Assembly: GCF_964204645.1 (NCBI RefSeq)
Contig: NC_134031.1
Coordinates: 16,045,807-16,109,806 of the forward strand
Reading direction: 5' to 3'
Origin: Tubulanus polymorphus
Lineage: Eukaryota; Animalia; Nemertea
DNA length: 64,000 bases
The notes below the pieces were generated by a model, which did not search any database, had not been told where the DNA came from, and worked only from the letters and a program-made list of their open reading frames with translations. The translations under genes were made by a program, and so were the position numbers. Positions 18,601 to 43,000 of this stretch are shown here, one piece after another (position 1 is the stretch's first letter; the number at the start of each line of letters is the position of its first letter).

Positions 18601-19019
18601 TTATTCCACAATGCAGCAAGAAGCCTACATCGTAAATGCATATTTCTCTTTATTTGCCACAACCACAACACAAACAATTTAGACAAACTAACAGCAAGTC
18701 GAATCCTTGAAAAAAAGATATTTTCAAGGAGACAGTTTCACAGGACGTCAAACTTCACAATTGGCCAGGTTTGTAAAGCAAGGTCCGGTAACTGGACGAC
18801 AGATCCACGGGGAACTTAAGAATTTCTCTGGGGTTTTGTACACAAATAATAAATTTTTTTTACTTCTTAGATTAGCCACGACATTATGCTATAATTGATT
18901 ATTATCATATATATTTATTATCACATTCAGCTCAAAATATCGCCCACAACGGCTGCATATGTGCCGCAATTGGAAAACTGTATTTTTTCTTCGAGTTCCC
19001 AGTCTCCTAGTTCGACGAT
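15700..19019 (-). promoter_or_regulatory. Putative MEGF6 3'UTR
   Basis: Follows the stop codon; AATAAA on the - strand at 15723-15728 is one of several candidates, so the end is uncertain. Confidence 0.35.
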
Positions 19020-19078
19020 TCATCCTCCTAAGTGTGCCGGTGTGTCACCACGTTGTGGACCAGTGAATATATTTGAAC
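19020..19078 (-). CDS. MEGF6: Probable MEGF6 terminal coding exon ([19 protein letters not shown])
   Basis: Strong acceptor ttttatttcag, phase 1 compatible, TGA at 19020-19022. Confidence 0.7.
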
Positions 19079-22000
19079 CTGAAATAAAAACAACGCAAGT
19101 CTTTAATATTTCAACGAAGGATAAAGTCGAGTATAGATTCTAGCGGACCTTACTTTTTACTTCTGTCAATTGAAATTTGGCAATTTGAAAGGCTTTAGAA
19201 TACATTGTTATATTCTGAGATGTATGCTTTAATTCGTTTTGTTTTTAAGAAGATTTTGGCTGAAAAGGTTGTGAAATTAATGTCATAATTTGCCACAGAG
19301 AGTCTTTAAGTCGAAATTTTTCTTTTTTTAATGTCAGATTTCTTGTGCAGAATGTGCATAAATGGTTAAATTTCTATTTCAACCAGACAACACCGAATCA
19401 ATGAGTGCAATAATCTAGCGAATTGTACCTGCAATCTGTATTTCTAGACTGAGTGAATGTTGCTATTGTTCACAGACAAATCACAAGACAAGACAACTAT
19501 ATATTCATGTAAATTAAGTCATATGTTTTTGGTTTAGTTTTCGAGTTTTGAAATCAATTGAATCAAATCAAATTCATCAAAACAGTTTTAAAACTTCGAA
19601 CTAGTTTCTAAAAAAAATCCGCATAATTTTACATATCTTATTAGACGCCGATTATTCAAGATGATTTAAGAATTATTTAGAGTAGATTTGTCTCTAGCTG
19701 AATGATTCTCTTCGAAAAAAGGCCAAAAGACAATGAGATATAAAAGAAGCTGTTTGAATGTATATATGTAGAAGCTACTGACACAAATCACGGACACAAT
19801 ATCGAAATCCACTTTTTTGTGGATGAAGTTTACCGACGCTCCATCGCGTATCAATATGTATTACTCATAGAAAGAAGTTCTACACTAATTCATCATGATA
19901 ATTATAGAAACACCTTAATTGATCGTAGTCGATCAATCTTAAGAACAACAGATGAATTTCTTACTATACGCCCTCTGCAGTTCTTCCCAACATATTGTTA
20001 ATGTAGTCTATTTATTCATCTGCTATTCTCAATCAGCCAATTCAGAAACATCTTCATACAATTACAATGATCAGACAATTATTTTATTCAAACACATTTA
20101 CCTCCTGCGAAAATGAAAAATAGATAATCCCCTCATACGACTGAGCACGGAAGTATATTACATCTTTTTTTCGTGCTCCGATTAAAAGAAAAATCAACCG
20201 AAATATTGAATAGTCGAAGTACGATTGGCCAAGATGAAAAAAGAACTCAGGCTATACCCTATTTTCTCTGGCTTGATGGATGACAAGGGATTTAAAAAAA
20301 TCAAGTAAATGGTCAGCAAGTGAAAAGGGTTCATGCGTGGCTGCTCTACTTACTGTTTTGTGGATGTTTTATGTGATTTAGGTGTCGCTTGGGATGAAGT
20401 TGAAATTCTTCGGATTCGAGATCAAGAGATTCTTCGGGGGAAAATGAAATAAAAAACAACATCAAAATTCGCACGATAAACAAAATTCAAAAAAAAATCT
20501 AACTGAAAACATCGATGGGCTGTAATAGAAATATGAAAATGAATTACGTTTTTTATTTCAAAAGCGCCCTAGACATCGGGCATTCGTTTTGGAAACTAGA
20601 AAAATCAAGCAAATTGAAATGATCGTCTATCACCTAAGGGACGGATGGAGCGATAAGAAATTTACACGATTTCATGGTGGAAAACGGAGACAGTAAAGAC
20701 AGACACAAGATTCCAAGGGAGCAACGATAGATACCATATCATCTTTAAAACTGAGGGAAAAGTGAAGTAATTTCAAACCCAATCCCAATTAACAGTTAGT
20801 TTTCGAATATATATATATATATAAGTAAAGATGATTGCAAAAGGCATATCAATATCACGATCCCTTGGAAATAGATATTTTATTGAACTGCAAGGAAAAC
20901 GGGGAAGCTGAAAGTTGAAATCTCCAGCAATATTAAAAGTTAAGATTGTCATATAGGTTCAATGTGCTATATTTAAAGTGCAGTAGAATGGTTAAGTGCG
21001 TATGATACTTGAAAGCATGCTTCATTTGTGCAAAGGACAATAAATCACGACGACAGAGTTTTAGAATTAAAAAAAAACACATTTTCTCCTTCATTCTTCA
21101 CCGGTGGTTACCTCGTAGAGAGAAATAGTTATCCTGACCGCGTCCGTTTTCAGTTAGGCTTAGCAGAAGAGACAGATATCAGTAGATTTTTAAAGCGGAC
21201 AGTCAACAAGTAACGGGTCTGCATTCACGCCATCGCATGCTAGGTTTGGGCGTTCCAATGTGTCTGAAGCATATTAGCCGGTTTACAAAATGCATTTTCG
21301 CTTCTCTCATACTGAAGATCAAATATATTTTTGCTTCCCTCATGTGCGTACTGTCAAATACTGTCAAAATCAGCTCCAAAATGTTTAGAGTTTTCACGCT
21401 ATTGTACATACATACAGTATGAGAGACATTCGAAAAATTTGAAGGCCAGGTATTCTAAGTAACAAACTTTGATGGGATGAAGGTGTTTACGAAGCAATAT
21501 TAAGATTCCTTGCAGTTTTGATATTCATAAACATAGACTAGGACGCTGACCTACTATACATACATTTACATATAAAAGACTTGCACTGATTCACATGCGA
21601 AAAGTATTCAGTTTAGAACTGAATTCAAACTTCATGAACCAGTACAAGTACGAGTAATCGATCAATGTAGCAAAGGAGGGGAGGGTTAACATTAATTGAT
21701 ATGACCTTTCGTTAGTAAATTGGCCAGAAAATGTTAGTTGCAAAAACTTGCATCATTCACACACGTCGGCGAAAATGTTAAAAAAGATATTTGAAAACAA
21801 ACAGCTGAAAAGGAATTTTGTCATTCACATCTTTATGCGTGGTTCGAGCAATGGAATTTTGTATTACCTTCTTTGGTTTGGCATTGCGCGCCGATCCAGC
21901 CCTCTTTACACTTACAGGCGCCCGTAACGGAATCACAGCCAGAACTGTTCTCGCAGTCGCAAGTGAATGTACAATTAGGGCCGTACCTCGCTCTCGGGCA

Positions 22001-25000
22001 ATCTACAGAATATACAACAAGTCTTCATTCATTATTACCTTCAAATCGGCGTGGACACTGGATCAAATATTGCACGAGATCACAGATACGAACCTTTGAG
22101 ACATTTATTACCCATTTTACCAGACGGGCAATCGCAGTCACCTGTGATAGGATTGCAAACGGCCACATTTCCTTCACATTTACATTTCTTCTTGCATTTT
22201 GGACCCCATTTACCATCTTTGCAGACTATAAACGACACGGGAATAGTGAAACGAACGGTAATTTACGTATGAAGTCTACGTTGAAAAATACTAAATTATA
22301 TTTCGATTGATAACACACTCTATCCGTGTTGTGACGATAATGTAGAAAGAGTCCCACAATAATAACGAAAGAAGTTTACAATGTTTCCTGGAGCTAGTAG
22401 TTTATTCAACGTTTCCACTGTATTCTAATAGTCATCTTCAGGAATACTCAGTAATACAGGAATACAGTACTCCTGAAGATGACTATTAGGATATAGTCGA
22501 AACGTCGAATAAACTACTTGCTCCGGTAACATTTCTGTCTGTTTTTCGTTATTATTGTGGGATTCTCTCTACACTAAATTCTACTAATTTTTCAATATTT
22601 TACTGACCTTTTTCACATCTATTCCCACGATATCCATCTTTGCATATGCATTGTCCAGTTTCCGAGTCGCATACCGCGCCGTTTACGCAATCACAGCGTT
22701 TGCTACAAGACTCTCCGTACAATCCAGGCGGACAACCTTAAAGTGTGATTGAAAATGCTTGAATTTAACGATTAACTGAATTTCCATTGCACTGGACGTT
22801 TTGGGAAGTGTTTTCTTTTATAACTTACTGAATTCACACTGTTGCCCGTAAAATCCTGGTTTACAATTACAACAGCCAGAGAATCTACCGCAAGATGCGC
22901 CGTTCTGGCACTGGCAGTTCTGGGTGCAGTTGGGACCGAACAATCCATCTGGGCAGGGTTCTGTACACGCAGGACCCATCCAACCTATACCACAAGTGCA
23001 CATGCCAGTCTCGGGATCGCAAAAACCGCTGTTCTTACATTGGCAAATACCGCTACAATCTGGTCCAAATGTGTTATCGGGGCAAGCTGAAAATATCAAA
23101 ATTGATATAGGGAACAATAGTAAGTAAAATCCATAGGTGAACAACCTAATTTACTTAGCAACTTAGCTTTACCTCGATCGCAATTCTTTCCATAGTATCC
23201 CGACTGGCAGCCACACTGTCCTGTTACATGGTCACACGTGGCATCGTTCTCACACTTGCATTTCTTAGAGCACAAATGGCCGTAACTACCTTTCGGGCAC
23301 TTGTGCTTGCACGTCGGCCCGACGAAGCCCACTGGGCAGACGCACTGACCGGTGACAATATCACACGACGCTCCGTTTTGGCATTTGCATTTCGACAGAC
23401 AATCCGGTCCGTACATATTCACTTTACAACCTGGAAGAAGTATTCGTATATAGATAACGAATTCGTGAATAGATAATGTGTGATACTTCGGGCAGATCTT
23501 CAGGATCCAGGGCCCGGTTCCACAGTTGTGAGTTAGAGTTAACTACGAGTTAAAAAATCAGTTCATTTTCGATGTTTTAACTCTAGAGTCAGATTTAACT
23601 CAGAACTGTGGAACTGGATCCAGTTTAACAGTCGTGAGTTAGAGTTAACTCTTGGGTTAAAAATCAGTTCATCTTCAATGAACTAACTCCGAGTCAAATC
23701 TTAACTCACAACTGTGGAATTGGGTCCAGTAATTTACCTCTGTTACAATGTTTGCCTCTATGACCAGATCTACAGATGCAGTCGCCACTGATCGGGTCGC
23801 ACATGTAGTTACGCCCGCACTTGCACTCATTACGACAATTCGGACCCCATTTATCTTTAGAGCAACCTGCAATAAACGCACGCAATCAGTATCAATGTCT
23901 TCAGATCTTAAGATAAGAAGAAAATGTTCGCATCTTACGTCTATCGCACGCGAGGCCGGTGAAACCAGCTGGACAATCACACTCTCCGCTGATATGATCA
24001 CACGGTTCGCCTTGCGGGCAGCGACATTTCTGTTTACAATTCAGACCATAATAACCCGGTAAACAAGCTGCAAATCGAAAATAAACAACACATGATAGTC
24101 GTACGCAGGAACTAGAAAACAGCCATCCAACGATTTATACCTTTTTCGCAGAAGTGTCCTCTCCATCCAGCGCGGCAATGACAGTTACCAGTTTCAGAGT
24201 GACACTTCGCTTTATTCTGGCACATACATTTCTCCTGACAATCCTGACCATAGTAACCTTTCTTACATTCTACAATAACACGAATTAAAATGACTAACCT
24301 AACGCACGTGAACATGGGGTTTATGAAAGTTTACAAGTTTTTATGCAACATATCATAAGACAAGAGACAATTAGGACGTACTAGCATTGCATTTTTCTCC
24401 ACCAAAGCCAGGGCGGCAGTGACACTGTCCAGTGAATCGATTGCAGGAGAGACCATTTACACATTCACATCGTTCAGTACAATTAGATCCATATCTCCCT
24501 TCACTGCAAGCTAGAATTTCGAAAATTTCGAAATCATTATGAGTCTTGTTTTCATTCGACGTACCAACCAAAAGGTCGTATAACTTACATAATTCACAAG
24601 CCATTCCTGTCCAACCGGCCGGGCAATTACACTCTCCTGATACAGGATGACAAACACCACTATTTACACAGATACAAGGTCTTGCGCAACCCTGTCCATG
24701 ATAACCACTTGGGCAAGCTATGGAAATAAACCAGATTTAACTTTGGGTTCAAACCGTCAAATTTTAGAAGATGATTGCAGAGATCTAAGCTGCGCGCCTA
24801 CCTTGTTCGCATTGTAATCCCCTCCAACCAGGTTTACATACGCACTGTCCTGTAATCGGGTCGCATGCCGCGCCGTTTTTGCACTTGCATTTATGTCTAC
24901 AATCTCGACCCCATGTACTGGCCGGGCATCGTCGAAGACATCCTGAAAATTTAATCCTTCAACAGTAATTTGGATACGTTCATAGGAGCTTATATCGTCA

Positions 25001-28000
25001 TCATGCGAGCGTTTGAATCTTCATCTTGTAATCGATGTTCGAATTGATATAATTTATACCTGTTCCAATCCAACCTGCCGCACAACTACACTGTCCGTCA
25101 ACCGGACTACATCGGGCCCCGTTCTCGCAATTACAAACGTCTTTGCAATCGATGCCGAAAAATCCATCGGGACAAGGCTTTTCACAGTGAGTATCTCGCC
25201 AGCCGGGTCCACATCGACAAGCCCCGCTGATGTGGTCGCAATGGGCCCCATTCGCGCATTTACAAATACGCTTACAACCGGGTCCATATGTGCCGTTGTC
25301 GCATTCTGGTCAAAGCATAACGAGACTTATTATGAAATAATGAATTCAAACATCTTAGGGATGCATCTGGATGAATTGGGTCCCAAACTTACTTTCGTTG
25401 CAGCCAAGTCCGTGCCAGCCAGGAGCGCATATGCAATCTCCAGTTTGCGGGTCGCATTCAGCGCTATTTGAACAGTTACATCGCTGTTTACAATTGCGTC
25501 CGAAAGTTCCAGCCGGACAAGCTAAAATTTTACAAAACTTGTTATAAAATCGCGATATATGAAAATCTCATAATATACTGTCTTCAATCAGCGCTTTCAT
25601 TCTTATATATAGTTTTAGGCATAGGTTTTATTTAAGTTTTAAGTCTCCGTCTAAATTTTTTCAATTTCAAAATTAGTTTCAGGAAAAATTAAAATCTTCG
25701 GTTAAAACACTTTATATTCATTCATATCATTGTTAAATGATTGGAATCATGATGTTTTTCGTTTTCGTTAAACCTCAAAAGAATTAGTCGATGAAAAGAG
25801 ATGGAAATTCTAAAAAAAGATTATGCTAAAAGAAGTTTCTTTTGATTTGAGGTAAAATGATTTCAATTATTGGTTTAATCAACTTTTGCGACGATACAAT
25901 CAAAAGATGAATCATTAAACGAAAGCCATGCAAAGTTTTGCCCAGTTAGGAAGAGAGTATGAAATAAGAGAAAATAGTAAAGCTATTTCTACGAAGTTTT
26001 ATCTAAAAGAGACATTTACGTTTATAACAAATAATCGCATTTATCAAATCACAGTTACATTTAGCATTCACAAAAATACAAGAATCTGACGCCACAACTA
26101 CGTAACATGAAGCGCAGGTTTTTCCTTTTAAAACTTATTGAATGTAAAAAAAATCTTTTTAAGATTTCTTTTCAAATCTTCAAACTTTATTCATACGAGA
26201 TATTTTAGATAAAGATTGAATTAAAACCGAGAAAAACCAAGAAATTAATGAGATAAATTGAATAAAATTAAATCAAAAATATCGTTTTCTTAATCGATTT
26301 CACTGAGTTTGGTGAGATTCGTTAGCAAACTATCAGAATACGCAGTTTAAACACATTTTTAAACGATTTTAGAAATATAATTCCTATCAGATATTGAGCA
26401 TTTCCACAGTTTTTTCAAGCATGTATCTCAACATTATATACATGACGTGTATAATAGACGGACAGTATACATTGTAACAATATCAACTGCTCTGGTCTCT
26501 AACAGTTCCGTACCTCCCGGCCCTGGCCGTGCTTCATTACATGAAAATTTCAGAGAACATACAATGAAAAATCGTCTTACCATCACCTCGGACATATATA
26601 CAGAGCTTAGATTCTTGTTTCCATGGAAATCATGATACCAAGAAACACATGAATATACAATTTTCAAACGAAATAGAATTTGAAAAGTATATTTAGCTAC
26701 AAGGCGAAAATGTATATGATATAAATATTTTTGAATTAACTTGAGACATCACGACATCGAGATTTCGCCAAAAAGGAATCGTCCAAAGTGAGGGGTCCAC
26801 CCACCAATATCATTGTCAGTTAGCGGTGCCGCGGTTAAACCTGGTGTTTGTTCAGATTGTTGATGCATACCCCTATCGCATAGCTGACCAGTCCAACCGT
26901 TCGTGCAATTACATTTCCCCGACACCGGGTCGCACGTTCCTCCATTCTCGCAAAGACACCTCAACAAACACTGTGATCCATAGCGTCCCGGTGGACAACC
27001 TGAATTTGACGGAAAGCGTTGTTTTCAACGTAAAACTATCCCATACATTTCGAGGAATTATGATGTGACGCTGATGGAATTTCGTTGTTCCGACTCACCT
27101 TCTGAACAATGTTGTCCAAACCATCCCGGTTTGCAGACACATTCTCCGGTCTCGGGATTACACGTGGCACCGTTTTCACAACTACATTCATTCGCGCAGT
27201 TGATTCCCCATTTACCGGCAGCGCATTCTGCAAAACAAACCTCAAATCTGAATAGGTAATAAATGACATTTGATATCATCGAAAACCTGAATTCATCGTC
27301 CACTGATAATCAGTGATAGAAAAGAAGCTCTTCGTTTCAACAGGAAAATGCAATTTTCAATTTAAGATTATCTAGATTTCATTGATCGAAACAAATTCAA
27401 AAGATACAAGGAACAAGTAATTAGACTATCAAATACGGTTAAGTTAATTTTACAATTAGCAATACAGTATACATAATGCGTGTACAGAAATCGCGCGGAG
27501 TCCTGTATACGCAAGTTCATGAGGCTGCGTTCATGTGTAAAAGCAGAATTCGTAAGCAAACAGGGATCGATGAGAAAAAAGCAATCAAAATCTTCTAAAA
27601 ATAGATAGAGAGATAGAGAAAAAATGGGATGGGTTGGGCACATTCAATGTGGATGGAATAAAGAACTATAGCGAAAATTACCTGCGCTTTCATCCGGGTC
27701 ATCGACCGTCTGAAATGTACCTCTACACAACTACGTCATGAAATCGTCTACGATTTCACGCTAAACAATTATAAATCTGGTGGTAGTTTGTCACAGTTTG
27801 GTCAGTCACACGGTGACGGTATAGGTATATAAATATATATAGACATATATATATATATATATAGATACGGTTAGTTTGGATGTTGTTTGATATAATATGC
27901 AGTAGGAGTGAAAACTCTACGACCTACAGCGTTATATATACAGAATCTGAGACCACATGAAATCGTTCGATTCTCATAATTTCGGCAATGAATTTTTTCT

Positions 28001-31000
28001 TCGGAAATGTCCGCAGCATATTTCATTCGCTATGCATATAGGTTTACATTCGTTCGTTCGAAGTGAAAATCAACGACAGTTCAAGATCCATCGGTAAAAA
28101 CGTTTGTTGGCAATATGATTACGAACTATATAGTTCAGACGATTCTGTTTCGGTCTCATTCTACAGAAGTTTTCTCCTTTCGACGGAGCGCTTCCGTATA
28201 ATATCTTATGAGAATGAAAGCAAATTCAGTGCGGTCTTATCTACATACCAATATTCATATAACGTTCCTCTTCTTATATTTTTGTGAAATCAATATATAT
28301 ATACAGAGAGAAACTGAATTTAAATCTGATCTAATCATGTCAGATTACATCAGTATCAATTATCAAACCAATTTTGTTATGAATTGGTTTATTCATGTAA
28401 ATAGAATGCATTTCATTCCACAAGCAGATTTAGGTATTTTTGTAAATTTACTTCTTGTCATGTACGTAGCATGTTAGTATTCTACAAAAAGCCATATAAT
28501 GGAATATAGAATACGGAACGTGAATATAACGTCTAGAAATGTTTGTTTTTTCCATTATAAGTCTTTATTGTTTTGAGGAGACCATGATTAGTACTGCATG
28601 AAGCATATTTTCTGATAGAGCATATCATAACATATTCGCGGCGCGCACCCATGTGGTTAAAATAACATACTTCGCTATGCGGCGGGCTGTGAGGTAAAAG
28701 ATAGGTGGGAAGACCGGGCAATCAGATCAATATTCTGGGCCCGGAATCATCGAAATTTGATGAGATCATGCTTGGCAAATCAAAATTTAAGTCCCTATGC
28801 GAATGAACCAGTCACATTTCGGCAGAACTGGAAATTTTTGATGTAATTTGCCCAGAATTTGTCGAAGTAATCAAATCTTAAACATCGTTTGGCTTTGTGG
28901 ACCAGATTAGATAAAATTTACCGGTCTATCCCAATTATCCTTACGTGATCTGTGATGTGCTTTATATTTATTCACGTTATTCTATTGTTTTATTTATTTA
29001 CCTTGTTTGCAGTGCGGGCCCGTGTGTCCGGCCTCGCATATACATTCACCCGTTTCTGGGTCACAGCCGCTCCCCTCGCAACGACAATCCTGGAGACAGT
29101 TCAAGCCCCAGCGACCCTTGATACACGCTGGACCGAACGAAAAGAGATTCAGTACACAACAATCAACATGAAAATGGATGGCTGAGGAAAATGGGAAAGC
29201 GCTGATGATATTTGGGAATCCAGAAGCAACTGTCTTGTTTTTTTATGTCCTGTTTTTTTCGTGTTTCTTTCTGTTTTTTTTTCTTTTTATTCGTAGTATA
29301 ACAAGTGCAATGTCTGTGAGATGGTCGAGGCAAGTTTTGTATTCTATTGCCGACTTGATATTGCTGTATATCGGAAGGTGGATTCAGGTCGCTACGAAAG
29401 CTCTAGACACAAGCATGCAGACGATAATACAACATGGAAAAATTGTACGGAAGACAAAACAAAGACAAAGACGAAATAGCCTGCTACATCTGCACTAATG
29501 CCGGGGTTAATCGAAATGAATAGAATTCTAGATTTGGCGAGGTGATTTATCATCTATTCTGAAAGTTATTTCTTCAAACTAGTTATATATATTTCGAATT
29601 GAATTCATTCACCAGTTTTATACTGAATTTTATTTATAGGAAGGATGAAAAGTAATCGGATTTTGAATAGGGTAGACACACAATGGTGGTTTTAGATTAC
29701 AAGCAGCAACAGTTGAAATACGGAGGAAAACAGTTAACTTATATTTCAAGCTTTTAAAGGTTGAGTTATATGAATTTCTTCTGTTTTATTCAAGGCTGTA
29801 AGACATTCGGCGAAAAGTCTTAGGGGTCGCTTTAAAAAAAAAGAATTCTTAAGTTGCCAGCGTTGAATTTCGATAGAATCACAAAAACACTAAAGGTTTT
29901 TATACATTCGGCGGCTAAAACCTACATTTTCTATAATGTGTTAAACAGACACTGCACTTATTTTTCTCTCGATATTTTCTTATTATTTATTCGCTTTTAG
30001 AGGACCTCGCATGCAGAAGGAAAACCATCATGCAGGTTTCATATCGCGGGAATTGGGTTCAGCGAAAAGTTTTAAACAAGACATTCTTTTTTGTTGGACC
30101 GTTTATGTCAGGAATTGGCAAAATGTTTATGGAAAGTGGCGAATATCACTGCTGGAATGAGGTTTTGATAGTTAGATCCGGATTAGGAGTCATCAGCAAT
30201 GAATTCGTATTCATTGGACAATGCTACAATGAGCATTTTTAAAGTTTAATATTTATCTATTAATATGGAGCATTTTTGCATTGTCCAATGAACGTGAAAT
30301 GATACATGAATCTGAAAACAAGAAATATATAGTTTATGAAATTTATAGAAATTTGATAACGCACCTTTAATCAATCAATAACTTTAATCATATATTTAGA
30401 TGTTTTTAACTATGACATCGATGGCTTTTTGAGATAGATGCGCAATTAAGAAAATATTAAGTCATGGCCAAATTTCTTTTTATGGATTTTTTGATAGCAA
30501 ATGTTGGAAAATTGAAGAAAGAATGATTAACAGCTCTTCACAACGGGCAAAATCAAAACAGTCATGTTTTCGTATAGGATTCCAAGAATACAAAAAGGAC
30601 GAAGCAAAATGACCACGCATTTTCGCTGAGACTTTGCTTGGATTTTACCCGTTCGGTGTTGAAATACTGTTACGAAGAGAAAAAGCCAGAACGAGCAAAA
30701 AGATGAAAAAATTGGTAAGTCATAGGTCCCCTAAAAGTACCATTAACCTACACATGATAGTCCAGGCATGCCTACATGGCAGGCAGATCTCTTTTCAGAA
30801 TAAAACCATCACCTAATTGTTTTCTACACTATTCGGGAGGGGACGCATGTCAAATATCATCAGAGCCAACTACCAAATATGCCTGATAACGATGCCTATC
30901 GCCTGACGCTAAACAAAGCTCGTGAAGCGTGTCTGGTTTGTACAAATTTGAAATCATCTTTCGTAGTTGACTCTGGTATAAAAATCGGATGCTAAAAGAT

Positions 31001-34000
31001 CTCTAGAATCGTGGGAGTGATCGAAATAAAGAATCGAAAGTTCGCGTAGTAAGATATCGTCGACTTACGCTGATCGCAACGATCGCCGACCCATCCTATC
31101 GGACAATCCTGCATACATTGTCCAGTCTCGTGATCGCAGACGGTTCGCGAGCTACACTGGCACAATTTCGAACATCCTAAACCGTAGTAGCCATTACGGC
31201 ATTTGCTGTTGCATCGGGCGCCTTCGTAACCTTTCTTGCATTTACAATCACCGGTCTGCAATTGATAATTTCAAACAATTTCGATTACGGAACTGATACT
31301 TTCCTAAACCACCCGGGCAAAGTCGGTACCACGTAACGCCAGGTTTTTTGTATGTTATACCTCAGCATCACAGCCGGTAGACCTCTCCTGGTTACATTTA
31401 CACTGCTTAACGCAATTCGGCCCGTAGGTGTTTTTCGGGCACGGCAGGTTGCACTGAGGTCCGAAGAGTCCCGGGGCGCACTCGCAGTAACCGTACTTGC
31501 GATTACAATGGCCGCTAGCGCACGTCTGCGGGCAAGTCTTGTCGCAACTCGCTCCGTACTTTCCAGGCGGGCAGCCGTCCTCACAACTAGAGCCCTTCAC
31601 CCCGGGAGGACATCGACACGCACCGGTAGCGGGGTCACATCTACCACCGTTTTGACAGGAACAGATTTGGTTGCACCCTTCGCCATACATTCCCTAGAAA
31701 TACAGATTACCAGAAATTCCGCCAATGCCTGAGAAAATTCAGTTTCTACGTACGTACATGTTAACAGCAAATTATGAAAAGAAATTCTTTTCTTCATCTT
31801 AAAATTCTTGAATAGAATTCCACTTCAGGCGTTGAAACTTACCGTTGGACATGTATTATTGCACAGTTCCCCCATCCATCCAGGCTTACATTCGCAACCG
31901 TCCAGGGCTGCGTTACACATGCCACCATTAGCGCAGTCGCTACAACTGTATGTGCAATCCACACCAAACGTACCCGGTACACAAACTGCAATCACAGATT
32001 AAAACGATACCGAAATGAACGACCAAAAATGAACAAACACTTAATCGTTTGCCAGTATTACCTGGACAACTCGATTCATTCCCTTTTCGGGTGACATGAA
32101 CAAAAGTGGATAGATAGGTGGGTGGGGAACAGAGGACTCTGGTTAGTTTTATGAAAGATTTTGATTAGTAGGAACAAATCAGGTTTTCAATGCAACATGC
32201 ACCGTTCATATAAGCAATCATATCGTTATTCTAAACAATAAAATCTAAGTTTGGTTATAGAACCATTTTCCCAGAACACGGGCAACATTGTAAGTCTAGG
32301 ATGTGAGTTATCCATTCATGCAGCGTACAAGCATCTATCTATTTGAATTCACCGAGAAATGTGTCTTTATTGTCAATTATTAAGTGTATTCATGTGCGCG
32401 ATACAAAACAAAGTTTATTTCTAACTATGAGGCAAAAGCGGTGAATAGAACTTATAGATATAAGTCTATCTAGATTTCGATATTTAGAAATAAATCGAAA
32501 AAGAAACTTTTTTGTTTGTAACATAAATATAAAGGGTTTAAGCATTGCACCTGACTTCAACGATGGACTTTTGCGCGGTCCTTTTCTCTGAAAGAAAATC
32601 CCTTTGTATTCGATGTATATAAATAATGGTGCACGATTATAGAAAAACGCTCGAATAATGAAGAAAAAAAGAAGAAAATGAAACTGTGCATTTTGTGAGA
32701 CGAATGATGCTTTAGTGTTTGAGGTTTACCTCGGTTCACTTTTATTCCTACTCGGCAACATTTATATAGCAGCCACGGCAGCAGCAGCAGCAGCAGCAGT
32801 AGTAAAGAAGAACATTGATATTAACATTGAAGGGTGTTGGAATATTGAGGCTATGAAAACTAACAATGATCGTGGTGTGGATTCTAGGTAAGGATAAACG
32901 ATAACATGATGAAAGGTTTTTTGAATATTGGATCTTTTGAGAAAGCGGAGTTCGAGATTTTAATATGTTATGTTGAAATGTAGAGTTAAATGACGTAGAC
33001 AAGTTCTATGCCTGAAAAAATCGGTTCAAAGTTATTAGAAGTGATATCATTTGCACGAAGAGACTTTGTATTTTCAATCGTCATTTCATGCGTGGAACGC
33101 GATCATGCAAAAATAGATATCATTTTGGGAGACTTCTTATTCTGATGGATGTTTTTGAAAAAAGATAAAAGAGTTTCATTCATTCCATTTATTTCAGTCA
33201 TTGAAAAATGGGAAGAGAAAAACATTCGGTGCAAGAAGACAAACATGGTGAGATTGATCGGGAAAAGCTTGTGCTGAAAGCAGATTGTCCTCGCGGCTGG
33301 ATTCATGCATGGACATAATATAGACGAAATGTCTTCATTTCACTGCGCGTTACGTTCGTCCAAAGCGCAGTTATAGAATGAATAAATCGTATACATCTTA
33401 ATGCTGAAAACGTCACGATGCATGCACAAAAACATGACACAAACAACAAACGACCAAAACGTTAACAATGAAGGAGAAAAGACGAAGAAATCTATGACGT
33501 TAAATGACATGAAATTTTCAGGAAACAGGTGATTGCGGAATACCATCACGATACAGGCATAACCTTTATACCTCTATAGAGGTACAGTTTCTTCAAGTGA
33601 AATATTTGGAAGCTTCATATACTGATAACCATTTGTTCTTAAAGTTAATATCTTCTTCGATTCATTTTCTTAAACAGGTAAAACCCTTGGCATACTAATG
33701 ACACTCTGTATGTGTACTATACCTTTGATTTTAATTCCTACATTTAGAAAGCGTAAAATGTACAGAAAGTCTAAATGATATATACTGATTAATATTGCCA
33801 TCTTTTGTTATTGTATTATAAGTTCATTTCAAGAGAAATGATGACACTGTCTGTGTTACTAATATCAACTCTAAAAATGTCCCAAATGCAAAATCAAGTT
33901 TTAAACGCACAAATCCTTTGGAAATCCGGGGAATCATTTGAATCCGGTGCCAACGTTCTAGTTCCATATTTCTCACGGTGGAATTAAGAAGTATTCAAAA

Positions 34001-37000
34001 CTATTGAACTGATTCTGAAAACCTTGCATTTGAAGCATTTTATCTGTTTTTTTTAAGCCATGCATATAAATTGCCAAAATTACTACATTTTAGATCTTCC
34101 GGAGACAACCGTTCCTTTTTCTGCACGGTATGGACATTTATATAGATAATACGCAATGATTCAACAACTAGAACGCTTGAAATTAAAACGCGTGCTTTCT
34201 AAATCTTGAGAAAATATTTGATAATGAACGAAAATATCGCATTGCTGGTGGTGGTTGTAGTGTACTTTCGGAAAAAGCAGGGGACTGTTTGATAATTTTA
34301 GATCCCAATTTGACTCAAGATTCAAAATCACACAACGTTTACATACGTTTGGAAAAATATGTGACACCAAATATCTGTTATAGATCCTGAACTAGAACAT
34401 CGTGAATCCATTTATAATATCAGGACCGACTTCTCAACTGCGTGAACTTACCGACTTGAGTTGCCGGCTGCATCAACTCTTCGTGTAGATCGAGATTTTC
34501 GGTCATCGGAATGATAGCAGGCGGTGTCGTTTGGTATCGAATAGTGCCGGGTAACAGATCACCACGTACCGGTTCATTTTCATTACCTTTCAGAGAAGGA
34601 GCGGCTGAAATGGAAAATGAGTGTCGTTAAAGATACAAGGTCTACGTTTAGAAAACTTCGTTTTAACGTGTTCAGACATATCCCTCATTTCGTACGCATA
34701 CCGATACATCGTTTTCCATCCTCAGCAATGATATAACCCGCGCTACATATACACTGATACGAGCCTTCAGAGTTGACACATTTCTGTTCACAACCGGCGC
34801 GATTATCTTCACATTCATTTATATCTGAATAAAAAATAACAAGAAATATCAATATTTGTATAGACGATGTTCTTTGTGAGATTGACGCCTCTTTTACTGA
34901 AAAATCTGGTAAAAACACGAGCATAATTCCTATCTATCATTACACGCACCTTCACAGCCGCAGCCATCTGAAGCCAAACGAAATCCTGGTTTACAACTAC
35001 AACTGTATCGACCGACTGAATTATGACATAGTTGACTGCAGCAATCTGTCCCCTTGTTACATTCGTCAATGTCTGAAACAATCAAACATTCAAAATCCAT
35101 ATGATGACGTGAGTGAAGAAAATCGAGTTAGGAATAAAGAGACGCGAGATTAGATTATTCTCTATTGCTCCAAATTATACATAATTCTTTTTAGCACAAA
35201 GAAAGATAAGTATACCTTTGCACGTTTTCCCATCAGCTTGTAACATGTATCCCTTGTAACAGGAACAGATCGGGCCGCCAGCTCCGTGTTTACAAACGTG
35301 GTCACAATCGCCATTGTCGGTTTTACAGTCGTCGACCACTTCCACCTCAATTCCTGCGGATTAACAAAATACGTACAGATCTAAGATGCCATTTCTCGAA
35401 ATCGTTTTATTTCGAGTATAATCGTACATATACGTAGTAATCGTTTACGGGACTTAAACCCCTCTATTTCTAGACATCTTACCTTGGGGTTTGTGATCTA
35501 TTTTTATGCAGCGATAAAAATTCAAGAACAATTTGCATGTTTGATTATAACATGTATCGATGATAAATTACGAAACCTAGTCGCACAGCCGTGTATTAAA
35601 TGCATATTACTTAGAATTTGAATTGACAGCTGCGGAACTTTACTAACTCGACTAATTGAACGTGCAAAGAAACAAGATATCTTAGGAAGTTTCTAATGCC
35701 TGATATTGTCATCAAGCAGTTAGGATTTACCAAGGCGATTACTGTGTTTTTTTCAGTTTTTATTTCAAATGTGATCGATCTACAAAAGCGTGAAATGATA
35801 GTGAAAATCGACATGCAATGAAAGCCTACATACCTGGCAGTTTTTTAGGTTTAGCTAAGTGCGGCAAAGGGCAAGACAAAAACAAGTGCATCTATCATTA
35901 GTAACTTGTTCTAAATGACGTTTAAAATGTTTTCGTTGTTAGCGAATTTCGTATAGGCGGGTTATACAAAATGCGGACGACACGGCTATTGATTTCTACA
36001 TTCTAGCAGGATTTATGGTCGCCTGGTGATAACCACACATATCTACGTTAGGATGATGAGATTTTGATTTTTAAACAATTATGCATCTTCGGTTAAATGA
36101 TTAGGGAGTTAGTTGGACAGGAATAGTCTTATGGCACCCTATCATGGAAAGGCGTGATTTCTTATTCTGATTTCAACATGGATACTTCGAAAGTGTTATA
36201 AATGCAAAATATGTGCAGTCAAAGCTCGTTATAACGCCAGTCCTGGGACTGTTAAAATTTTGGCGGTATAACGAGCTTTGACTGTATGCGTGTGCAAAAA
36301 AGCTTAATCACAACGCCAGGCCATGGTGAAGTTCCATTGAGAGTAATGAAAGACCAAACAGGCGCATACCACCATTTTTTGCGATGAATAATATCTCACG
36401 CTGAAATGCTCGTTTTCAGCATAACTTACGGTAACATTTTCCATCCATTCCAGGACTGAAGCCTGGCAAACACGTACAAGCGAAACTACCCTGAGTGTTT
36501 GCGCAGGCCTGGCTGCATCCACCATTAGCTGCTGCGCATTCATCTATATCTATTGAACCCAAACAAGGACAACCAGATTGAATAAAACGAAATGACAAAA
36601 ATAGAAATTATATACCAATAAAAGAAGGAAACTTAACCGAACTCACTCGCTGGAGCAGAAAATCCAAAAATAGAGTAGGATTTCGAATTTTGACATACCG
36701 CTGCCAGTTTGAAATTTGGGAATTTACATTTGACTCTTGAGTTAGATATACTCTTACTCAGCTTCGGAGTCGAAATGTAACTAAAAATGTGGAACCTGGT
36801 TCGAAACCAGCTACAACTACTCCTGGACAAAATCAAACTAATATAAGGAGAAAGATAGGTAAAATAGTAGATGAACTATAGCAGCCACTATATCATCGCC
36901 TACCTTCACACGTTTTTTTATCTTGTCTCAGTCTGTACCCTTTATAACATTGACACCGAGCTTTTCCCGCGTAGTTGACACATTTCTGTTCGCAACCGGC

Positions 37001-40000
37001 GTTATTAACTTTACAAGGATTCACTTCTGTAAATAAGCGTTCGAAAAAAAGAACTCAGATAAAAAACTATAAGCTTAAGATTATATCGAACCCTTCATCT
37101 TCAAGAGTTCATTCACTAGGTCTTTTCTTTGGTTTCTCGTCAATTGACTTAATGTATGATTCAAGATTCGGAATGATTTAGATCCTGAAGTGTTTATGCA
37201 ATCTTCCAAAAGATTCTAAGTAATCTGCTTCATATGAAACGGCGTAATTATAATGTCATAATATCATCACCGATTACTTACGTATATTAGCATTTACATC
37301 AGCAACTTTTAGTGTAAATACTTTTGAAACAACATTCCGTGGATAACAAATGACGCAATTCGAATGCAAATTCAAAAAGCAACGTACGATATTCAAAAGA
37401 AATTGGTGCAAAAATAAATGAATGAAAGGGACTCTTTTATATACACCTACCCTCACAGGACTTAGCGTCGGCAGCTAGTTGATAGCCCTGATTGCAGCCA
37501 CATTGAAAATGTCCATTAAAGCCGGGCATGCAAAGCTGCTTGCATCCGCCGTTGTCAACGTGGCAACCACCATCCGCTAGATAACGAGGAAAACAGAAAT
37601 AAAAGGGTGGAAATAAAACAAAAACAAGGGGAGAGGGTGGGTTCGAGCGAGAGAGAGAGAAATTACTGAAAATTCTGCGAGGGCAAAAGAATGGCACTAA
37701 GACTACACTCCGTAACTATTGATAGGAAGGCAACAGCTATTGGAACTATTGACACGAAGGGAAGTGAGCATTATAATAAACTACTGAATTTAGCTTGTTC
37801 TTTTCTTATTTTCGACGGAGCAATTACATCCCTTTATACATAATTGAGTTTGCTTGCTGTATTGGCGTTAAGGGTCGGTTTCCTATTCAACTGTGTTAAC
37901 GCGGGAATTGGGCGATTCACGATAATTTGATTAATTAATGAAATGGGACTTATAGCCATCGTGGCGCGGTCAGATATACCGATTGATTTCTTTCCCTAGG
38001 GGGAAATAACTGATCGGACCGAAAGTTTAAACAGTGACCAGAAAATTCTTGTCTCATATGTTAATGGCTGAGCGTCTCCCGAGTAGCAACTGTTCGAAAT
38101 CTGTAAGCATCTTTTGGGACATGTTTATTCATAAGTTGTCAAAGATTTCGTCTGTTGGCAAATATGACCTTTCGCATGTGGGGGAGGCTGTAGAAAATTC
38201 ATATCGACCAGATATTCCTTCGTTTCTATATAGTATGATTAATGAAACATGGGAAATATATTCATTGGTAAATGTAGGCAAGACACTTCAAATCCGCACC
38301 CATTATTATCGAGATAGCAGGCGCGCCGAGCCGAAGTATTTTAAGAAGTCTATTAAAAGCGAAAATGCGTAAATCGACTTAATGGCTTTTGCTGTAAAAC
38401 TGATGCTGTACTCGGTCGATTTTTCAGACTGGCGAATTAAAGACGAAATCCCGTCGTGACCGACACAATAGCCACGACTCGAGGCAAAATCTGCCGAAAT
38501 TGCTTCCAACGTCACGAGTATGTATGCTATTCGAACAAACAACGAACGTCGATCATTCATCCGATTGGATTAGATCGGGAGATCCGTTGACATGGCTATT
38601 TGGATTAGTGTCGCAGAGATCAGTGAAACAGTCAACTAACGACGGATACACGCTTCACTTTGAAGTAGCCCATAGAACGACAATAGTTCCGCGTCCTGTT
38701 ATACTAAAAAAACGTATACCAAGAAATACGAGCGGGCTTCGATGAGAACTCGTGCGAACTACTATTGAACAAAACTACAGACTCCGAACCACTTCGCTGC
38801 TGAAATCGTTGGTGAACCCGAAACACGGCAAATTAGAGAAATCAAGGACAAAAAGAGCGGCACTAAATATAAATGCTCTCTTTTTTCTCACACTTTTCAC
38901 AGGGATATAGCAAATTATCAACTGCTGATATGAATTCTGATACATTATCTCTATACGCAGTGCAATAATTAACCGTTTTGTATCTCGTCTGTGACATAGA
39001 ATCATCAAACGCGCGCGACATACACTGCGGTCAGCATGACGCCAGTCATCCGAACAAATCGATGCCGCATAGATTTTTTAGACAGTCAGATCGACTGATA
39101 AACTTCCGGTTACATTTGCAGCGTCAAAAAATGTTTGACATCACGCGATTTGATCGCCTAAAGCCGGGGCTTCATGAATAGCGGCAGTGAAACTCTCTGC
39201 CGCTATGAGCCACGGAAAACTGAACTTAGAATCATATTACCGCCGTATCTTATTCTTTTTTCTTTTCTCTTTTTTTAACACCCTCAACCTGCTAAGCGCC
39301 ACGAAGGACATTATGAGTGGGTTTCTTTTTCCCAATGGGGAGAGACCAGAGAAGAACCTTCGACCAAGAAACTCTGTCGCCACCAGGGTTTGAATATCTT
39401 TTTCTTTCCGCCAGTTCCTTATTTATCATTTAAAAAAGCGATCCTAAATTTCAAGTATATCCAAGTTCATCGATTTCGATATGGGATTTTGCGCCTCAAC
39501 TTTCGAAAAAGTAAACAGCCCGATACTATAAAGGCGGGTGACGCGAAGCGATTGCCGACAGTTGTAAGGCCGACTTACAACCGTCTCAATGCTTATCATC
39601 GTGGTATTTCATATAATTAGTTTTCCGGTTTATCATCATTACATGCGTTATCTATGTAGATTTTCTTTAATTCATCGTTAAAGCTTATAGTACTTAATAC
39701 TAGAATACTTTTCGCCGAAAACTGTTTATCAAATATCACAGGGTCTTCGCCCGATCGATATTCTCTATCGAATTTGATTTCGAGTTCGATTTCTCTTTAA
39801 TCGGCGCATTAAAATCTCACGTCATCTTTCCGACGACAAAAACGGTCGATAAATTTAATCATTGTTTGGCAACGCATCTTCCAATTACTGATACGAAACG
39901 ACGACGGAAAATCTGTGACGTTTTCTTTCGATCCGTCGGCGTTATTGTTGACATCGGTGGCCAATCAGATTATAGGGTTTCGCAGACGCCGAATAAATCC

Positions 40001-43000
40001 AATACCGGGATACAGCGCCGAGGATCCTCCAGATTAATGGATAGCTACGTTGAACAAACAACGATTAAAACTGGCTATAATTGCGTTTTAGCCCAGACGA
40101 TGACAAAAATATCAACCAGCTCATTAGACTTTGTTCGTTGGAACTTTTCAAAATGCGAAGAGCCTTTCGAGATATTCGCGCTTCATATCATACTGTAATT
40201 GTGAACATCGCGTGCAGCGTTTTTATGACCCAAAATCGATACATATTCGAAATATAAATGGAAGCAATAATGTTGTCTTTTACGAGCTATGTTCGTATAA
40301 AAGGCGCTGACGTGAAGAGGTTCTTGAATCCGTCATACGAATTGTGTAACATGACATTATTTCGGAATAAATTCGATCGAATGCGTTATTCTGATATATC
40401 ACTATAATACAAAACAAGACCGTCTGGGGAAAATGATTTTCAGAGAATGTATACATGAACATGAACTGTATTTCGACTGGTAATATCCGGGATGCCGAAA
40501 CTTATGCTATATATTTGAAGCAATCTATGACCAAGTTTGAGCTCAGAGAAGTTTTCTTTAAAGATAAGCTTAGGTCTGCCTCTAATGGCCACCAAAGAAC
40601 CACCGAAGTCGGCTTACGTCTGGCTTTAAAGATGGAAAAATGTCCGCACAATCTTCAACGAATATCCTATTCAAAGATAATCAATCAACACGATATTAGA
40701 CAACGAATCGAAAAGAACATCACCGCAACCGCCTGCGAACCATTGAAAATAAAGAGATTTCACGGCGTATCGGCCTCATGGACTTGTAACTTGACAACGG
40801 TCGCTTCGATTTATAATATAAAGTCAAATAGCGGCGATAGAATTAATTTCATCGTATACTAATACATCGTACTGGGAATAAATATCGACTTGTGATTCGC
40901 GTATAATTCGATCAAGTAGTTCCTCCGATGCGGAGGGATGAGCGCATCAATTGTATCCGCTGCGGCTGCGACAAATTCCGGCGCCCGATCAGTAAATGCT
41001 CGAATCGATATCCCCGCCGCCATGGTTATTCGTCATTCGCTGTTGTCGATATGAAAGTTAGAAAAAAAGCCTAGCAAAATCCTGACATTTCTGTATATGT
41101 ATTTCTAATTCGCGTTTTGGAATGCATCGATAAGTTGTGTACTAGAGAAATGAATGTCATTACAGGGGCGGATCTAGGGTATGATTCAGGGAGGGGCGCA
41201 CCCCCAAAATAGGGCATATCATATGATTAAAATAAAAGGGCATTGGAAAACATTAACTCGTTTTTTTGGAGATACAGAGAAGAAGTTATAATTAATGAAT
41301 TTAAACTTATTTAGTGTAATGTTTCAATGTTTAATGTCAATTTAATGTTTTTGTTTTCCCGTAAAATTAAGGGCAACTTGATATTTTGACCCGCATCTGC
41401 ATTCAAGTAGGTACATGGTTACTAAGCTCAGGGGCCCTTCAAAAGTTGGTTAAAGTAAACCATCCTTACAGTGGAGTTTTGTGTCAGTTTGTTTGTTAAC
41501 TTCAACTTGTTATCTTCTAACTTATTTTTTCAAAAACTGCAGCTCCTGGGCTTTCTGGGTGAGCGCATCCATCCATGAAATCATTTACGATTCAGTGATG
41601 ATCAATTTAAGATGAAATTCTCATGAATCTGATGAATCTACTCATTATCACGTTACAGATATCTGAGCAAACCCAGCGTTGATGATATAATTAACCAGTT
41701 GAGTAGCGTTGCTTCATTTCACAAGTATTTCATATCATTGGACTGCGAGCTTTACTGCTGCTGGGATCAAATGATAGTCGTACTATGCGATAATCCCATT
41801 CAGGGTTTCTCAAACGTATCATTGATAATCATTTCTGCCTAGGTTTCCAGAGAGCGAGGCACTGATTGGTCTATATCGAGAAATGAATCTTCTGATTGGT
41901 TAATGAGACTGTTGATTATTGGTTGAAGCTAATCCCTGATTGGTTGTTATCGACTGGTCTCGTCGGGGGCTATCGAGAATTCAGAGGTGAAAACTGAGTC
42001 ATAACTTGTTATGCAGAGTGATCTAGGGGGTTTGTTGATATGTTTTTCTTGAGATTGTGTCAGTAAATAACACTGTCTGCAAACCTCGACCGCGAGATAC
42101 TGTAAAAAAAATCGCCTGAAATCACGATTTATGGGACGGGTTTATTGATGAGTCGAGACTCAAACGCAGACGAACTTTCTTCATCTCTTTCACAATCGAT
42201 ATCAACCAGTTTGATAACTTTACGACCGCCGCGAGATCGCGCAGAGAAAATCATACGCGCTCTGATTTTTCATTTCTCAGAAAAATATTTTCCTTTCTTT
42301 GATCCCGTTCATTCGCATTGATTAATGGTGGCCATTACTGTGCGAAAACTGCGAATGAAAGAATTATTGCTGAATTTGAAAAAATCCATTTCGTAACAAT
42401 TTTTCTGAATCATAGAACGCTAATAAAGATTTTTTCGAAAAGCATCTATTTAGCAGGGCTTTTAATTTTCGAAAACGATTTGGTAAATATTGAATCGATC
42501 GGAGCAGAAAGAAATTATATGAAATGATGAATTTCAATGAGCGTAATTTAAAAAAGATCCGTTCTTACGGTAACCCGTCAAAACGTGGCAGAAATGTTCG
42601 ACTTGCCGCGAATGGATTAATGTTTGCTGATCATTATATTCTCGAGAGATGCTCGATCGTGATTGGTTGACACCGACGTTGTTTAATCAGACGAGATTGG
42701 ATTAACCTGACTTTATGGGACAAGAGTAATCTCCCTTATCTCGTCACAGAGACCGTAAAAATAACCGCCGAGTAACCCCCTAATTTATCAACGCGGCTAT
42801 ATCCACAATCGGACACGAAAATGACAGCGTATTTCTCAAAGATACGATCACAATTCTAATGAAGTGCGGGATGAAATAAGATAGGTATCCCCATTAGTGG
42901 AGTCCTTGAAGAGACAAGCGATGCAATATTACTTACTACATGTCATTCGTTACATTAGATGTCCACGTCGACGCGAATGCAGCATTTTGACAGACGATTC

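What the first reader, a model, noticed from the sequence alone, without database searches (positions are those of the whole stretch)
20102..37305. Hidden battery of frame-preserving microexons between the EGF modules of MEGF6
Seen: on the - strand, at least ten short AG...GT-bounded segments are multiples of 3, stop-free in phase 1, and sit in introns between domain exons: 37282-37305 (24 nt, VADVNANI), 36647-36649 (3 nt), 35834-35854 (21, PKPKKLP), 35483-35497 (15, HHKPQ), 32730-32747 (18, GIKVNR), 32062-32082 (21, GNESSCP), 30649-30666 (18, LFQHRT), 28249-28272 (24, EEERYMNI), 26581-26613 (33, [11 protein letters not shown]) and 20102-20104 (3 nt). Most have strong donors (gtaagt, gtatgt, gtaaga, gtgagt), TGC motifs near the acceptor, and often an atypical AAG acceptor set off from the pyrimidine tract. 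They concentrate in the mid-sized introns. Known: this architecture resembles bilaterian neural microexons controlled by the eMIC domain of SRRM2/3/4. Inference: a combinatorial splice code tunes linker length, charge and binding motifs along a secreted EGF-repeat protein. I do not know of such a system described for MEGF6. Some candidates will be chance matches.
Basis: partly seen in the sequence, partly recalled or inferred. Interest (0 to 1): 0.85.

Follow-up and report, generated by a model that had tools for sequence, protein, structure and literature searches.

The report
Hidden linker microexons in worm MEGF6
An invertebrate gene for a long EGF-repeat matrix protein hides about eight tiny in-frame exons between its domains; one is conserved in a flatworm and mussels carry their own at the same places, so the protein is probably fine-tuned by optional short inserts, though no RNA from this animal was available to prove it.

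Summary
All ten segments exist as described inside a single-copy MEGF6 orthologue (probably a ribbon worm, per earlier scan notes). They are more than chance: 11 strong-donor, 3n, open, AG-free-zone segments in 12 kb against 2.2 expected from this genome, two 3-nt exons against none in 400 kb, and a sense-strand excess of RBFOX UGCAUG motifs. Comparative evidence is new here. The 18-nt exon 32730-32747 (GIKVNR) has sequence homologues in the same intron of Macrostomum lignano MEGF6 and of an unplaced animal. Two mussels conserve three UGC-led microexons in the same two introns, and Mytilus has two database isoforms that swap an RGD linker exon for one of them. The genome encodes an eMIC-type SRRM. 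Limits: no RNA runs exist for this species, so inclusion, neural specificity, eMIC dependence and combinatorial use are untested. Only 4 of 10 have a nearby TGC, and 32062 and 30649 are statistically weak. About seven or eight of the ten are probably real. It works like the PTPRD meB and teneurin-3 EGF7/8 linker inserts. I found no paper on MEGF6 microexons; the scan noted other microexon arrays in this genome.

The parts
61556..61693 (-). EMI-domain exon 1 of MEGF6 (e00)
   Evidence: 64% to Mytilus MEGF6 residues 36-81 and 53-66% to vertebrate MEGF6/EGFEM1; Pfam gives no hit on the half domain
60288..60398 (-). EMI-domain exon 2 (e01)
   Evidence: 50% to Mytilus MEGF6
34702..50434 (-). Ten phase-1 symmetric EGF and calcium-binding EGF exons (e02-e11)
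   Evidence: EGF_CA and FXa_inhibition hits on e08 and e09
37282..37305 (-). Candidate microexon, 24 nt (or 39 nt from 37320), intron e06/e07; my estimate 0.55
   Evidence: donor 8.3, 109-nt AG-free zone before 37320, no TGC, no homologue found
36647..36649 (-). 3-nt microexon, intron e07/e08; turns the junction C-E-D-I-D-E-C into C-E-A-N-I-D-E-C, changing the first calcium-ligand position; estimate 0.8
   Evidence: acceptor 11.9 with TGC at -8 and a GTGAGT donor; class seen 2 times in 12.9 kb and 0 times in 400 kb of control
35834..35854 (-). 21-nt microexon (PKPKKLP), intron e08/e09; estimate 0.85
   Evidence: donor 9.2, TGC, 35-nt AG-free zone, UGCAUG 17 nt downstream; mussels conserve two microexons in this intron
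35483..35497 (-). 15-nt microexon (HHKPQ), intron e08/e09; estimate 0.88
   Evidence: donor 10.8, TGC, 77-nt AG-free zone, single-copy DNA
34452..34604 (-). Linker exon e12 with an RGD motif; its mussel orthologue is absent from one of two database isoforms
   Evidence: RGD in window e12 and in Mytilus P0278; P0077 lacks the exon
33723..33737 (-). Extra candidate not in the finding, 15 nt (GIKIK), resembles 32730-32747 (10/15 nt); estimate 0.55
   Evidence: donor 7.2, acceptor 6.9
32730..32747 (-). 18-nt microexon (GIKVNR), intron e12/e13, conserved in sequence in other animals; estimate 0.95
   Evidence: Macrostomum L058:30573-30590 GILADR (11/18 nt) and L057:2425-2442 GIIAHR (13/18 nt), same length, same intron, GTAA donors, TGC-led acceptors
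32062..32082 (-). 21-nt candidate (GNESSCP), 76 nt before e13; N-x-S sequon and an unpaired Cys; estimate 0.45
   Evidence: weak donor 4.2, no TGC; mussel has a conserved 21-nt exon with an N-G-T sequon in this intron but no sequence similarity
31986..34451 (-). Intron e12/e13 with six UGCAUG (RBFOX-type) motifs
21868..31985 (-). Nineteen laminin-type EGF exons (e13-e31)
   Evidence: EGF_laminin hits on e14 and e17
30649..30666 (-). 18-nt candidate (LFQHRT), intron e15/e16; estimate 0.5
   Evidence: good pyrimidine tract, 62-nt AG-free zone, weak donor 4.6
28249..28272 (-). 24-nt candidate (EEERYMNI), intron e16/e17; estimate 0.6
   Evidence: donor 6.8, 39-nt AG-free zone, no TGC, single copy
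26581..26613 (-). 33-nt candidate ([11 protein letters not shown]) adding an RGD and an unpaired Cys, intron e18/e19; estimate 0.75
   Evidence: donor 7.9, 81-nt AG-free zone (class 3 vs 0.16 expected), single copy, no homologue found
26514..26531 (-). Extra candidate, 18 nt (ARPGPG); only 49 nt from 26581, so the two could hardly be included together; estimate 0.35
20354..20431 (-). Probable 78-nt tail exon
   Evidence: open in phase 1, GTAAGT donor; inferred
20102..20104 (-). 3-nt microexon in the C-terminal tail (S becomes R-G); estimate 0.8
   Evidence: acceptor 12.2, donor 9.2; class absent from 400 kb of control
19022..19078 (-). Probable last coding exon, ending with an RGD-containing tail and a stop
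   Evidence: AATAAA at 18919; the Seison homologue P0014 also ends in RGD

Best explanation
Most of the segments (about seven or eight of ten) are real, usually skipped cassette microexons of MEGF6. SHOWN: the sequence features, the excess over chance, phase compatibility, one exon conserved across distant animals, conserved microexons and alternative isoforms in the same introns of mussel MEGF6, and an eMIC-type SRRM in this genome. INFERRED: weak acceptors make skipping the default, and cell-type factors switch inclusion on: eMIC/SRRM234 for the UGC-led exons, RBFOX through UGCAUG, most likely in neurons or muscle. Every domain exon is phase-1 symmetric, so each insert lands in a linker and leaves the folds intact. 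The inserts lengthen or charge a hinge (e08/e09, e12/e13), alter a calcium-ligand junction (36647), or add an RGD, a sequon or a free Cys. This would change the shape and binding of a secreted rod-like matrix protein, as teneurin-3 insert A does between EGF7 and EGF8. The two hot-spot introns are old; most individual peptides are lineage-specific.
For: Enrichment over shuffles, antisense and genome control. Length mod 3 is 10/2/3 vs 117/100/102 in control, P=0.018. 32730-32747: the best match among 1303 same-length AG..GT pairs in 438 kb is in the orthologous intron of L057 (15/20), and the Macrostomum match (13/20) is one of only three at that level. In two mussels the only strong intron-to-intron alignments (E<1e-6) are three 3n UGC-led microexons; the 21-nt one has 4 of 4 changes at third codon positions, and the 33/36-nt one differs by exactly 3 nt. 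Mytilus isoforms P0077 and P0278 swap the RGD linker exon and the 21-nt exon. UGCAUG 11 vs 3.2+-1.7, reverse complement 4. SRRM_C split over two exons with the core intact. Four candidate regions tested are single-copy. Published eMIC features: weak 3' splice site, long AG exclusion zone, UGC (PMC8797185).
Against: No RNA from this species; the three runs found are DNA and show no joints. Nine of ten candidates have no sequence homologue in the loci available, all of which are very distant. The conserved exon was not found in mussels, Clonorchis, Seison, a tick or a fish. Six of ten lack the nearby TGC. The region and rules were set after seeing the candidates. Nothing here tests tissue or protein function, and many microexon deletions have little phenotype in zebrafish (PMC12626420).
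Confidence: 0.7

Rival explanations
1. Only a core of three to five is real (32730, 35834, 35483 and the two 3-nt exons). The TGC-less candidates are cryptic sites picked by eye, so there is no large battery.
For: All 8 conserved instances in other species have TGC; non-conserved mussel hits mostly lack it and occur at background rate, 6 sense vs 4 antisense per 16 kb. The weak-donor class is not enriched.
Against: The TGC-less strong-donor class alone is 7 vs 1.6 expected, P=0.001. 26581 has an 81-nt AG-free zone and encodes RGD in a protein with two other RGD sites.
Confidence: 0.15
2. The exons are real but constitutive or broadly included small linker exons that gene predictors miss, not a tissue-switched code.
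For: Earlier scan notes describe genes in this genome built from many tiny exons (not checked here). No tissue data.
Against: Acceptors are far weaker than those of the gene's constitutive exons. Both Mytilus isoforms skip microexons A and B and differ in C. RBFOX motifs cluster in these introns. 26581 and 26514 are too close to be included together.
Confidence: 0.1
3. All are chance AG..GT pairs or non-coding splice signals (decoys, recursive sites) in intron DNA.
For: AG..GT pairs are abundant, and one 10-kb control strand reached 12 under the loosest rule.
Against: 3n bias, strand bias, conservation of 32730 in the same intron of other animals, and synonymous-type change in the mussel equivalents.
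Confidence: 0.05

Closest known systems
eMIC (SRRM2/3/4)-dependent bilaterian neural microexons (PMC8797185)
   Same: 3-33 nt, frame-preserving, weak 3' splice site, long AG exclusion zone, UGC near the acceptor in four cases; the genome has an eMIC-type SRRM.
   Different: Neural enrichment and eMIC dependence untested. Six of ten lack UGC. Donors are strong (as in mammals) rather than weak (as in fly). That paper finds only four exons at equivalent positions between fly and mammals, whereas one exon here keeps its sequence between distant animals.
Teneurin-3 splice insert A between EGF7 and EGF8 (PMC11058771)
   Same: A short peptide inserted in the linker between two EGF modules, acting as a spacer that changes flexibility and contacts.
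   Different: One insert in a membrane adhesion protein with structures solved; here up to about ten sites along an apparently secreted protein, none tested.
PTPRD/LAR mini-exons meA and meB (PMC12598525)
   Same: Several tiny exons in an ectodomain; meB adds four residues to a domain hinge; combinations set ligand choice.
   Different: Ig-domain receptor with known ligands; MEGF6 ligands and combinations are unknown.
Mussel MEGF6 (Mytilus galloprovincialis VDI53712.1 and VDI53713.1)
   Same: Same exon structure, RGD linker exon, microexons in introns e08/e09 and e12/e13, alternative isoforms in the database.
   Different: Peptides unrelated to the window's; three conserved microexons found, not about ten.
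Micro-exon genes (MEGs) of schistosomes (from own knowledge)
   Same: Symmetric tiny exons diversifying a secreted protein.
   Different: MEGs are built mostly of microexons; here they are minor inserts in a conventional domain protein.

Membership tests
MEGF6 orthologue | N-terminal EMI domain, then EGF and calcium-binding EGF block, linker, laminin-type EGF block, in collinear order | tested here: met
   exon-by-exon matches collinear with Mytilus, Macrostomum and vertebrate MEGF6; Pfam EGF_CA and EGF_laminin; single copy
MEGF6 orthologue | Signal peptide and no transmembrane segment (secreted) | tested here: inconclusive
   first exon lies upstream of the window and was not found in 30 kb by a simple scan; the predicted tail has no hydrophobic segment
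Cassette microexon | 3-51 nt, AG..GT, frame-preserving in the intron's phase | tested here: met
Cassette microexon | Included in spliced RNA of this species | not testable with these tools
   no RNA run; X1-X3 are DNA and show no joints
Cassette microexon | Conservation in orthologous introns | tested here: met
   met in sequence for 32730-32747 only; by position for introns e08/e09 and e12/e13; not found for the rest
eMIC-dependent neural microexon | Weak 3' splice site with long AG exclusion zone | tested here: met
   acceptor scores -3.9 to 2.7 for the eight longer candidates; AG-free zones of 35-109 nt
eMIC-dependent neural microexon | UGC close to the 3' splice site | tested here: inconclusive
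   met for 36647, 35834, 35483, 32730; absent within 24 nt in the other six
eMIC-dependent neural microexon | eMIC-bearing SRRM2/3/4 gene in the genome | tested here: met
   G000:C2:27.84 Mb, two in-order exons with the conserved core; each below Pfam's cut-off alone
eMIC-dependent neural microexon | Neural-enriched inclusion and loss on eMIC knock-down | not testable with these tools
   no tissue RNA or perturbation data

The most novel reading that the evidence does not exclude
Spiralian MEGF6 carries an old, cell-type-switched splice code: eight or more linker microexons, one conserved in sequence between this animal and a flatworm, are combined independently to set the stiffness and the number of integrin-binding RGD sites of a secreted matrix protein. 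This would extend microexon codes from synaptic receptors to the extracellular matrix.
Probability: 0.25. Interest if true: 0.75.

Novelty: new member of a known kind. Interest (0 to 1): 0.55.

Why it matters
Microexon codes are known mainly from vertebrate and fly neuronal proteins, and individual microexons are rarely shared between distant animal groups. Here a poorly understood matrix protein has two microexon hot-spot introns shared with mussels and a flatworm, and one exon conserved in sequence. This gives a ready test in Macrostomum (RNAi, transgenics) and in mussel RNA-seq of whether microexons tune extracellular EGF rods and toggle RGD sites. It also shows that database MEGF6 models miss these exons.

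Tried and rejected
RNA evidence: one run search and one read lay (31800-37650) gave only DNA contigs, with no joints and an exon left uncovered in X2/X3. Polymorphism: none of 33 listed variants falls in a candidate, but only about 2 would be expected, so this is uninformative. Protein searches found no close relative of this species; the best single-exon hit is 67%. The JGI metagenome scan gave only weak, non-orthologous hits. Same-length homologues for the other nine candidates were not found in mussel or Macrostomum introns. The 18-nt exon was not found in mussels, Clonorchis, Seison, tick or Gambusia. The tree did not place L057 (81/68 with Macrostomum, long branches). The mussel e05/e06 insert has no counterpart in the window. 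A transposon origin was rejected for the four regions tested. Paper searches found no MEGF6 microexon report.
Full report
Gene. The minus strand carries a single-copy MEGF6 orthologue. It has two EMI-type exons (61693-61556, 60398-60288), ten EGF or calcium-binding EGF exons, a 153-nt linker exon (e12, 34604-34452), nineteen laminin-type EGF exons, and a probable tail ending at 19022. The 30-exon core is open for 1499 codons with 256 cysteines, and all introns are phase 1 except the two around e14. Exon-by-exon comparison is collinear with Mytilus, Macrostomum and vertebrate MEGF6. Earlier scan notes call the animal a ribbon worm. I did not test that; the closest named relatives in my data are mussels (60-62% on e14).

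Observation. All ten segments are real AG..GT, 3n, stop-free phase-1 segments. Seven have donors in the range of the gene's true exons (6.8-10.8 for six of them, plus the GTGAGT donor of 36647, which a matrix trained on this gene underrates). The eight longer ones have acceptors at or below the weakest true acceptor. Only four have TGC within 24 nt and four have AAG acceptors, fewer than the finding implies.

More than chance. In the mid-sized introns, strong donors are doubled relative to shuffles (30 vs 15.4+-3.6), and those whose nearest AG gives a 3n open segment are 12 vs 3.2+-1.7 (0/200) and 1 on the antisense strand. The long 5' introns show no excess. I then applied a fixed rule built from published eMIC features (PMC8797185): donor >=6, 3n up to 36 nt, open, 25 nt free of AG. 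It gives 11 hits in 12.1 kb against 2.2 expected from 395 kb of the same genome (P=2e-5). Lengths split 10/2/3 by frame against 117/100/102 in the control (P=0.018). Three-base exons with a strong acceptor and a consensus donor occur twice here and never in 400 kb of control. The RBFOX motif UGCAUG occurs 11 times (3.2+-1.7 expected), its reverse complement 4 times, and six copies sit in intron e12/e13. The weak-donor class holding 32062 and 30649 is not enriched. The region was chosen after the fact, so these P values are optimistic, but they point to roughly eight or nine real elements.

Conservation. (a) 32730-32747 (GIKVNR) has an 18-nt counterpart in the orthologous intron of Macrostomum lignano MEGF6 (L058:30573-30590, GILADR, 11/18 nt) and of an unplaced animal contig (L057:2425-2442, GIIAHR, 13/18 nt), each with a TGC-led acceptor and a GTAA donor. 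Among 1303 same-length AG..GT pairs in 438 kb, the L057 match is the best, and the Macrostomum match is one of three at its level. The database model of the Macrostomum protein omits it. It was not found in mussels, Clonorchis, Seison, a tick or a fish. (b) Two mussels with exons about 75% identical share only three strong intron alignments (E<1e-6), and each is a 3n UGC-led microexon: two in e08/e09 (18 nt; 33 vs 36 nt) and one in e12/e13 (21 nt, all four changes at third positions). These are the introns that hold the window's best candidates, though the peptides are unrelated. (c) Mytilus galloprovincialis has two database isoforms: one has the RGD linker exon, the other has the 21-nt microexon in its place. 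I did not see the RNA behind those models. (d) The fixed rule recovers all eight conserved instances, all with TGC; I had seen them before applying it, but did not tune it on them. Intron lengths also correlate between the window and a mussel (rho 0.67, P=0.012).

Regulator. The genome has an SRRM gene whose C-terminal eMIC core is split over two in-order exons. This makes eMIC control possible, not shown.

RNA. None is available. The three runs are DNA: there are no joints, and X2/X3 leave exon e08 uncovered and carry a recurring 12-mer that looks like a proximity-ligation linker (my recollection). Inclusion, tissue and combinations are therefore untested.

Mechanism (inferred). Weak acceptors make skipping the default, and eMIC and RBFOX factors would add the exons in particular cell types. 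The inserts fall in linkers: basic, proline-rich spacers before the conserved R-I-E-V-E-V strand at e08/e09; a D-to-A-N change at the first calcium-ligand position of e08; short basic peptides before e13; and an RGD plus a free cysteine at e18/e19. RGD also occurs in e12 (shared with mussels) and in the probable last exon (a Seison homologue also ends in RGD). A spacer-and-motif role matches teneurin-3 insert A between EGF7 and EGF8 (PMC11058771) and PTPRD meB (PMC12598525). Many microexon deletions have mild effects in zebrafish (PMC12626420), so a strong function should not be assumed.

Verdict. It is a new member of a known kind. I found no paper on MEGF6 microexons. The neural, eMIC-driven, combinatorial reading remains a hypothesis. 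Interest 0.55.

Noticed in passing
window:1-10550 (+): Convergent neighbouring gene with long low-complexity ORFs and a C-terminal SPOC-domain exon (9737-9937, PF07744, E 1.6e-12); probably SPEN/split ends. From memory, human SPEN and MEGF6 both lie on 1p36.
   Followed up: partly
window:33723-33737 (-): Extra 15-nt candidate (GIKIK) in intron e12/e13 that shares 10 of 15 nt and G-I-K with the conserved 32730 exon; possibly a tandem duplicate.
   Followed up: partly
window:47455-47487 (-) and 19154-19162 (-): Further candidates passing the rule: a 33-nt segment in intron e02/e03 and a 9-nt segment 75 nt before the last exon.
   Followed up: no
window:34452-34604, 26581-26613, 19022-19078 (-): Three RGD motifs: linker exon (shared with both mussels; vertebrate linkers often have RGE at another position), a candidate microexon, and the probable last exon.
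   Followed up: partly
L003:2581-2598, L005:87556-87573; window 32062-32082 and 26581-26613: Microexons that add a single unpaired cysteine recur: conserved in mussel microexon A and present in two window candidates. They could allow isoform-specific disulfide links.
   Followed up: no
L058:30290-30310: Second TGC-led 21-nt candidate (GYRLHVK) in the Macrostomum e12/e13 intron, not in the database model.
   Followed up: no
L005:81428-82438: Mytilus MEGF6 has two non-EGF exons between e05 and e06; no counterpart was found in the window's 7.2-kb intron.
   Followed up: partly
window:45590-46351 (-): Exons e03 and e04 are close copies of each other; Mytilus has one exon at this position, suggesting a lineage-specific exon duplication.
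   Followed up: no
window:35845: One contig of run X2 leaves the reference inside candidate 35834-35854; probably a ligation chimera, but an insertion allele is not excluded.
   Followed up: no
G000:C2:27842190-27844770 (-): eMIC-encoding end of the SRRM2/3/4 gene, two exons 2.3 kb apart.
   Followed up: partly
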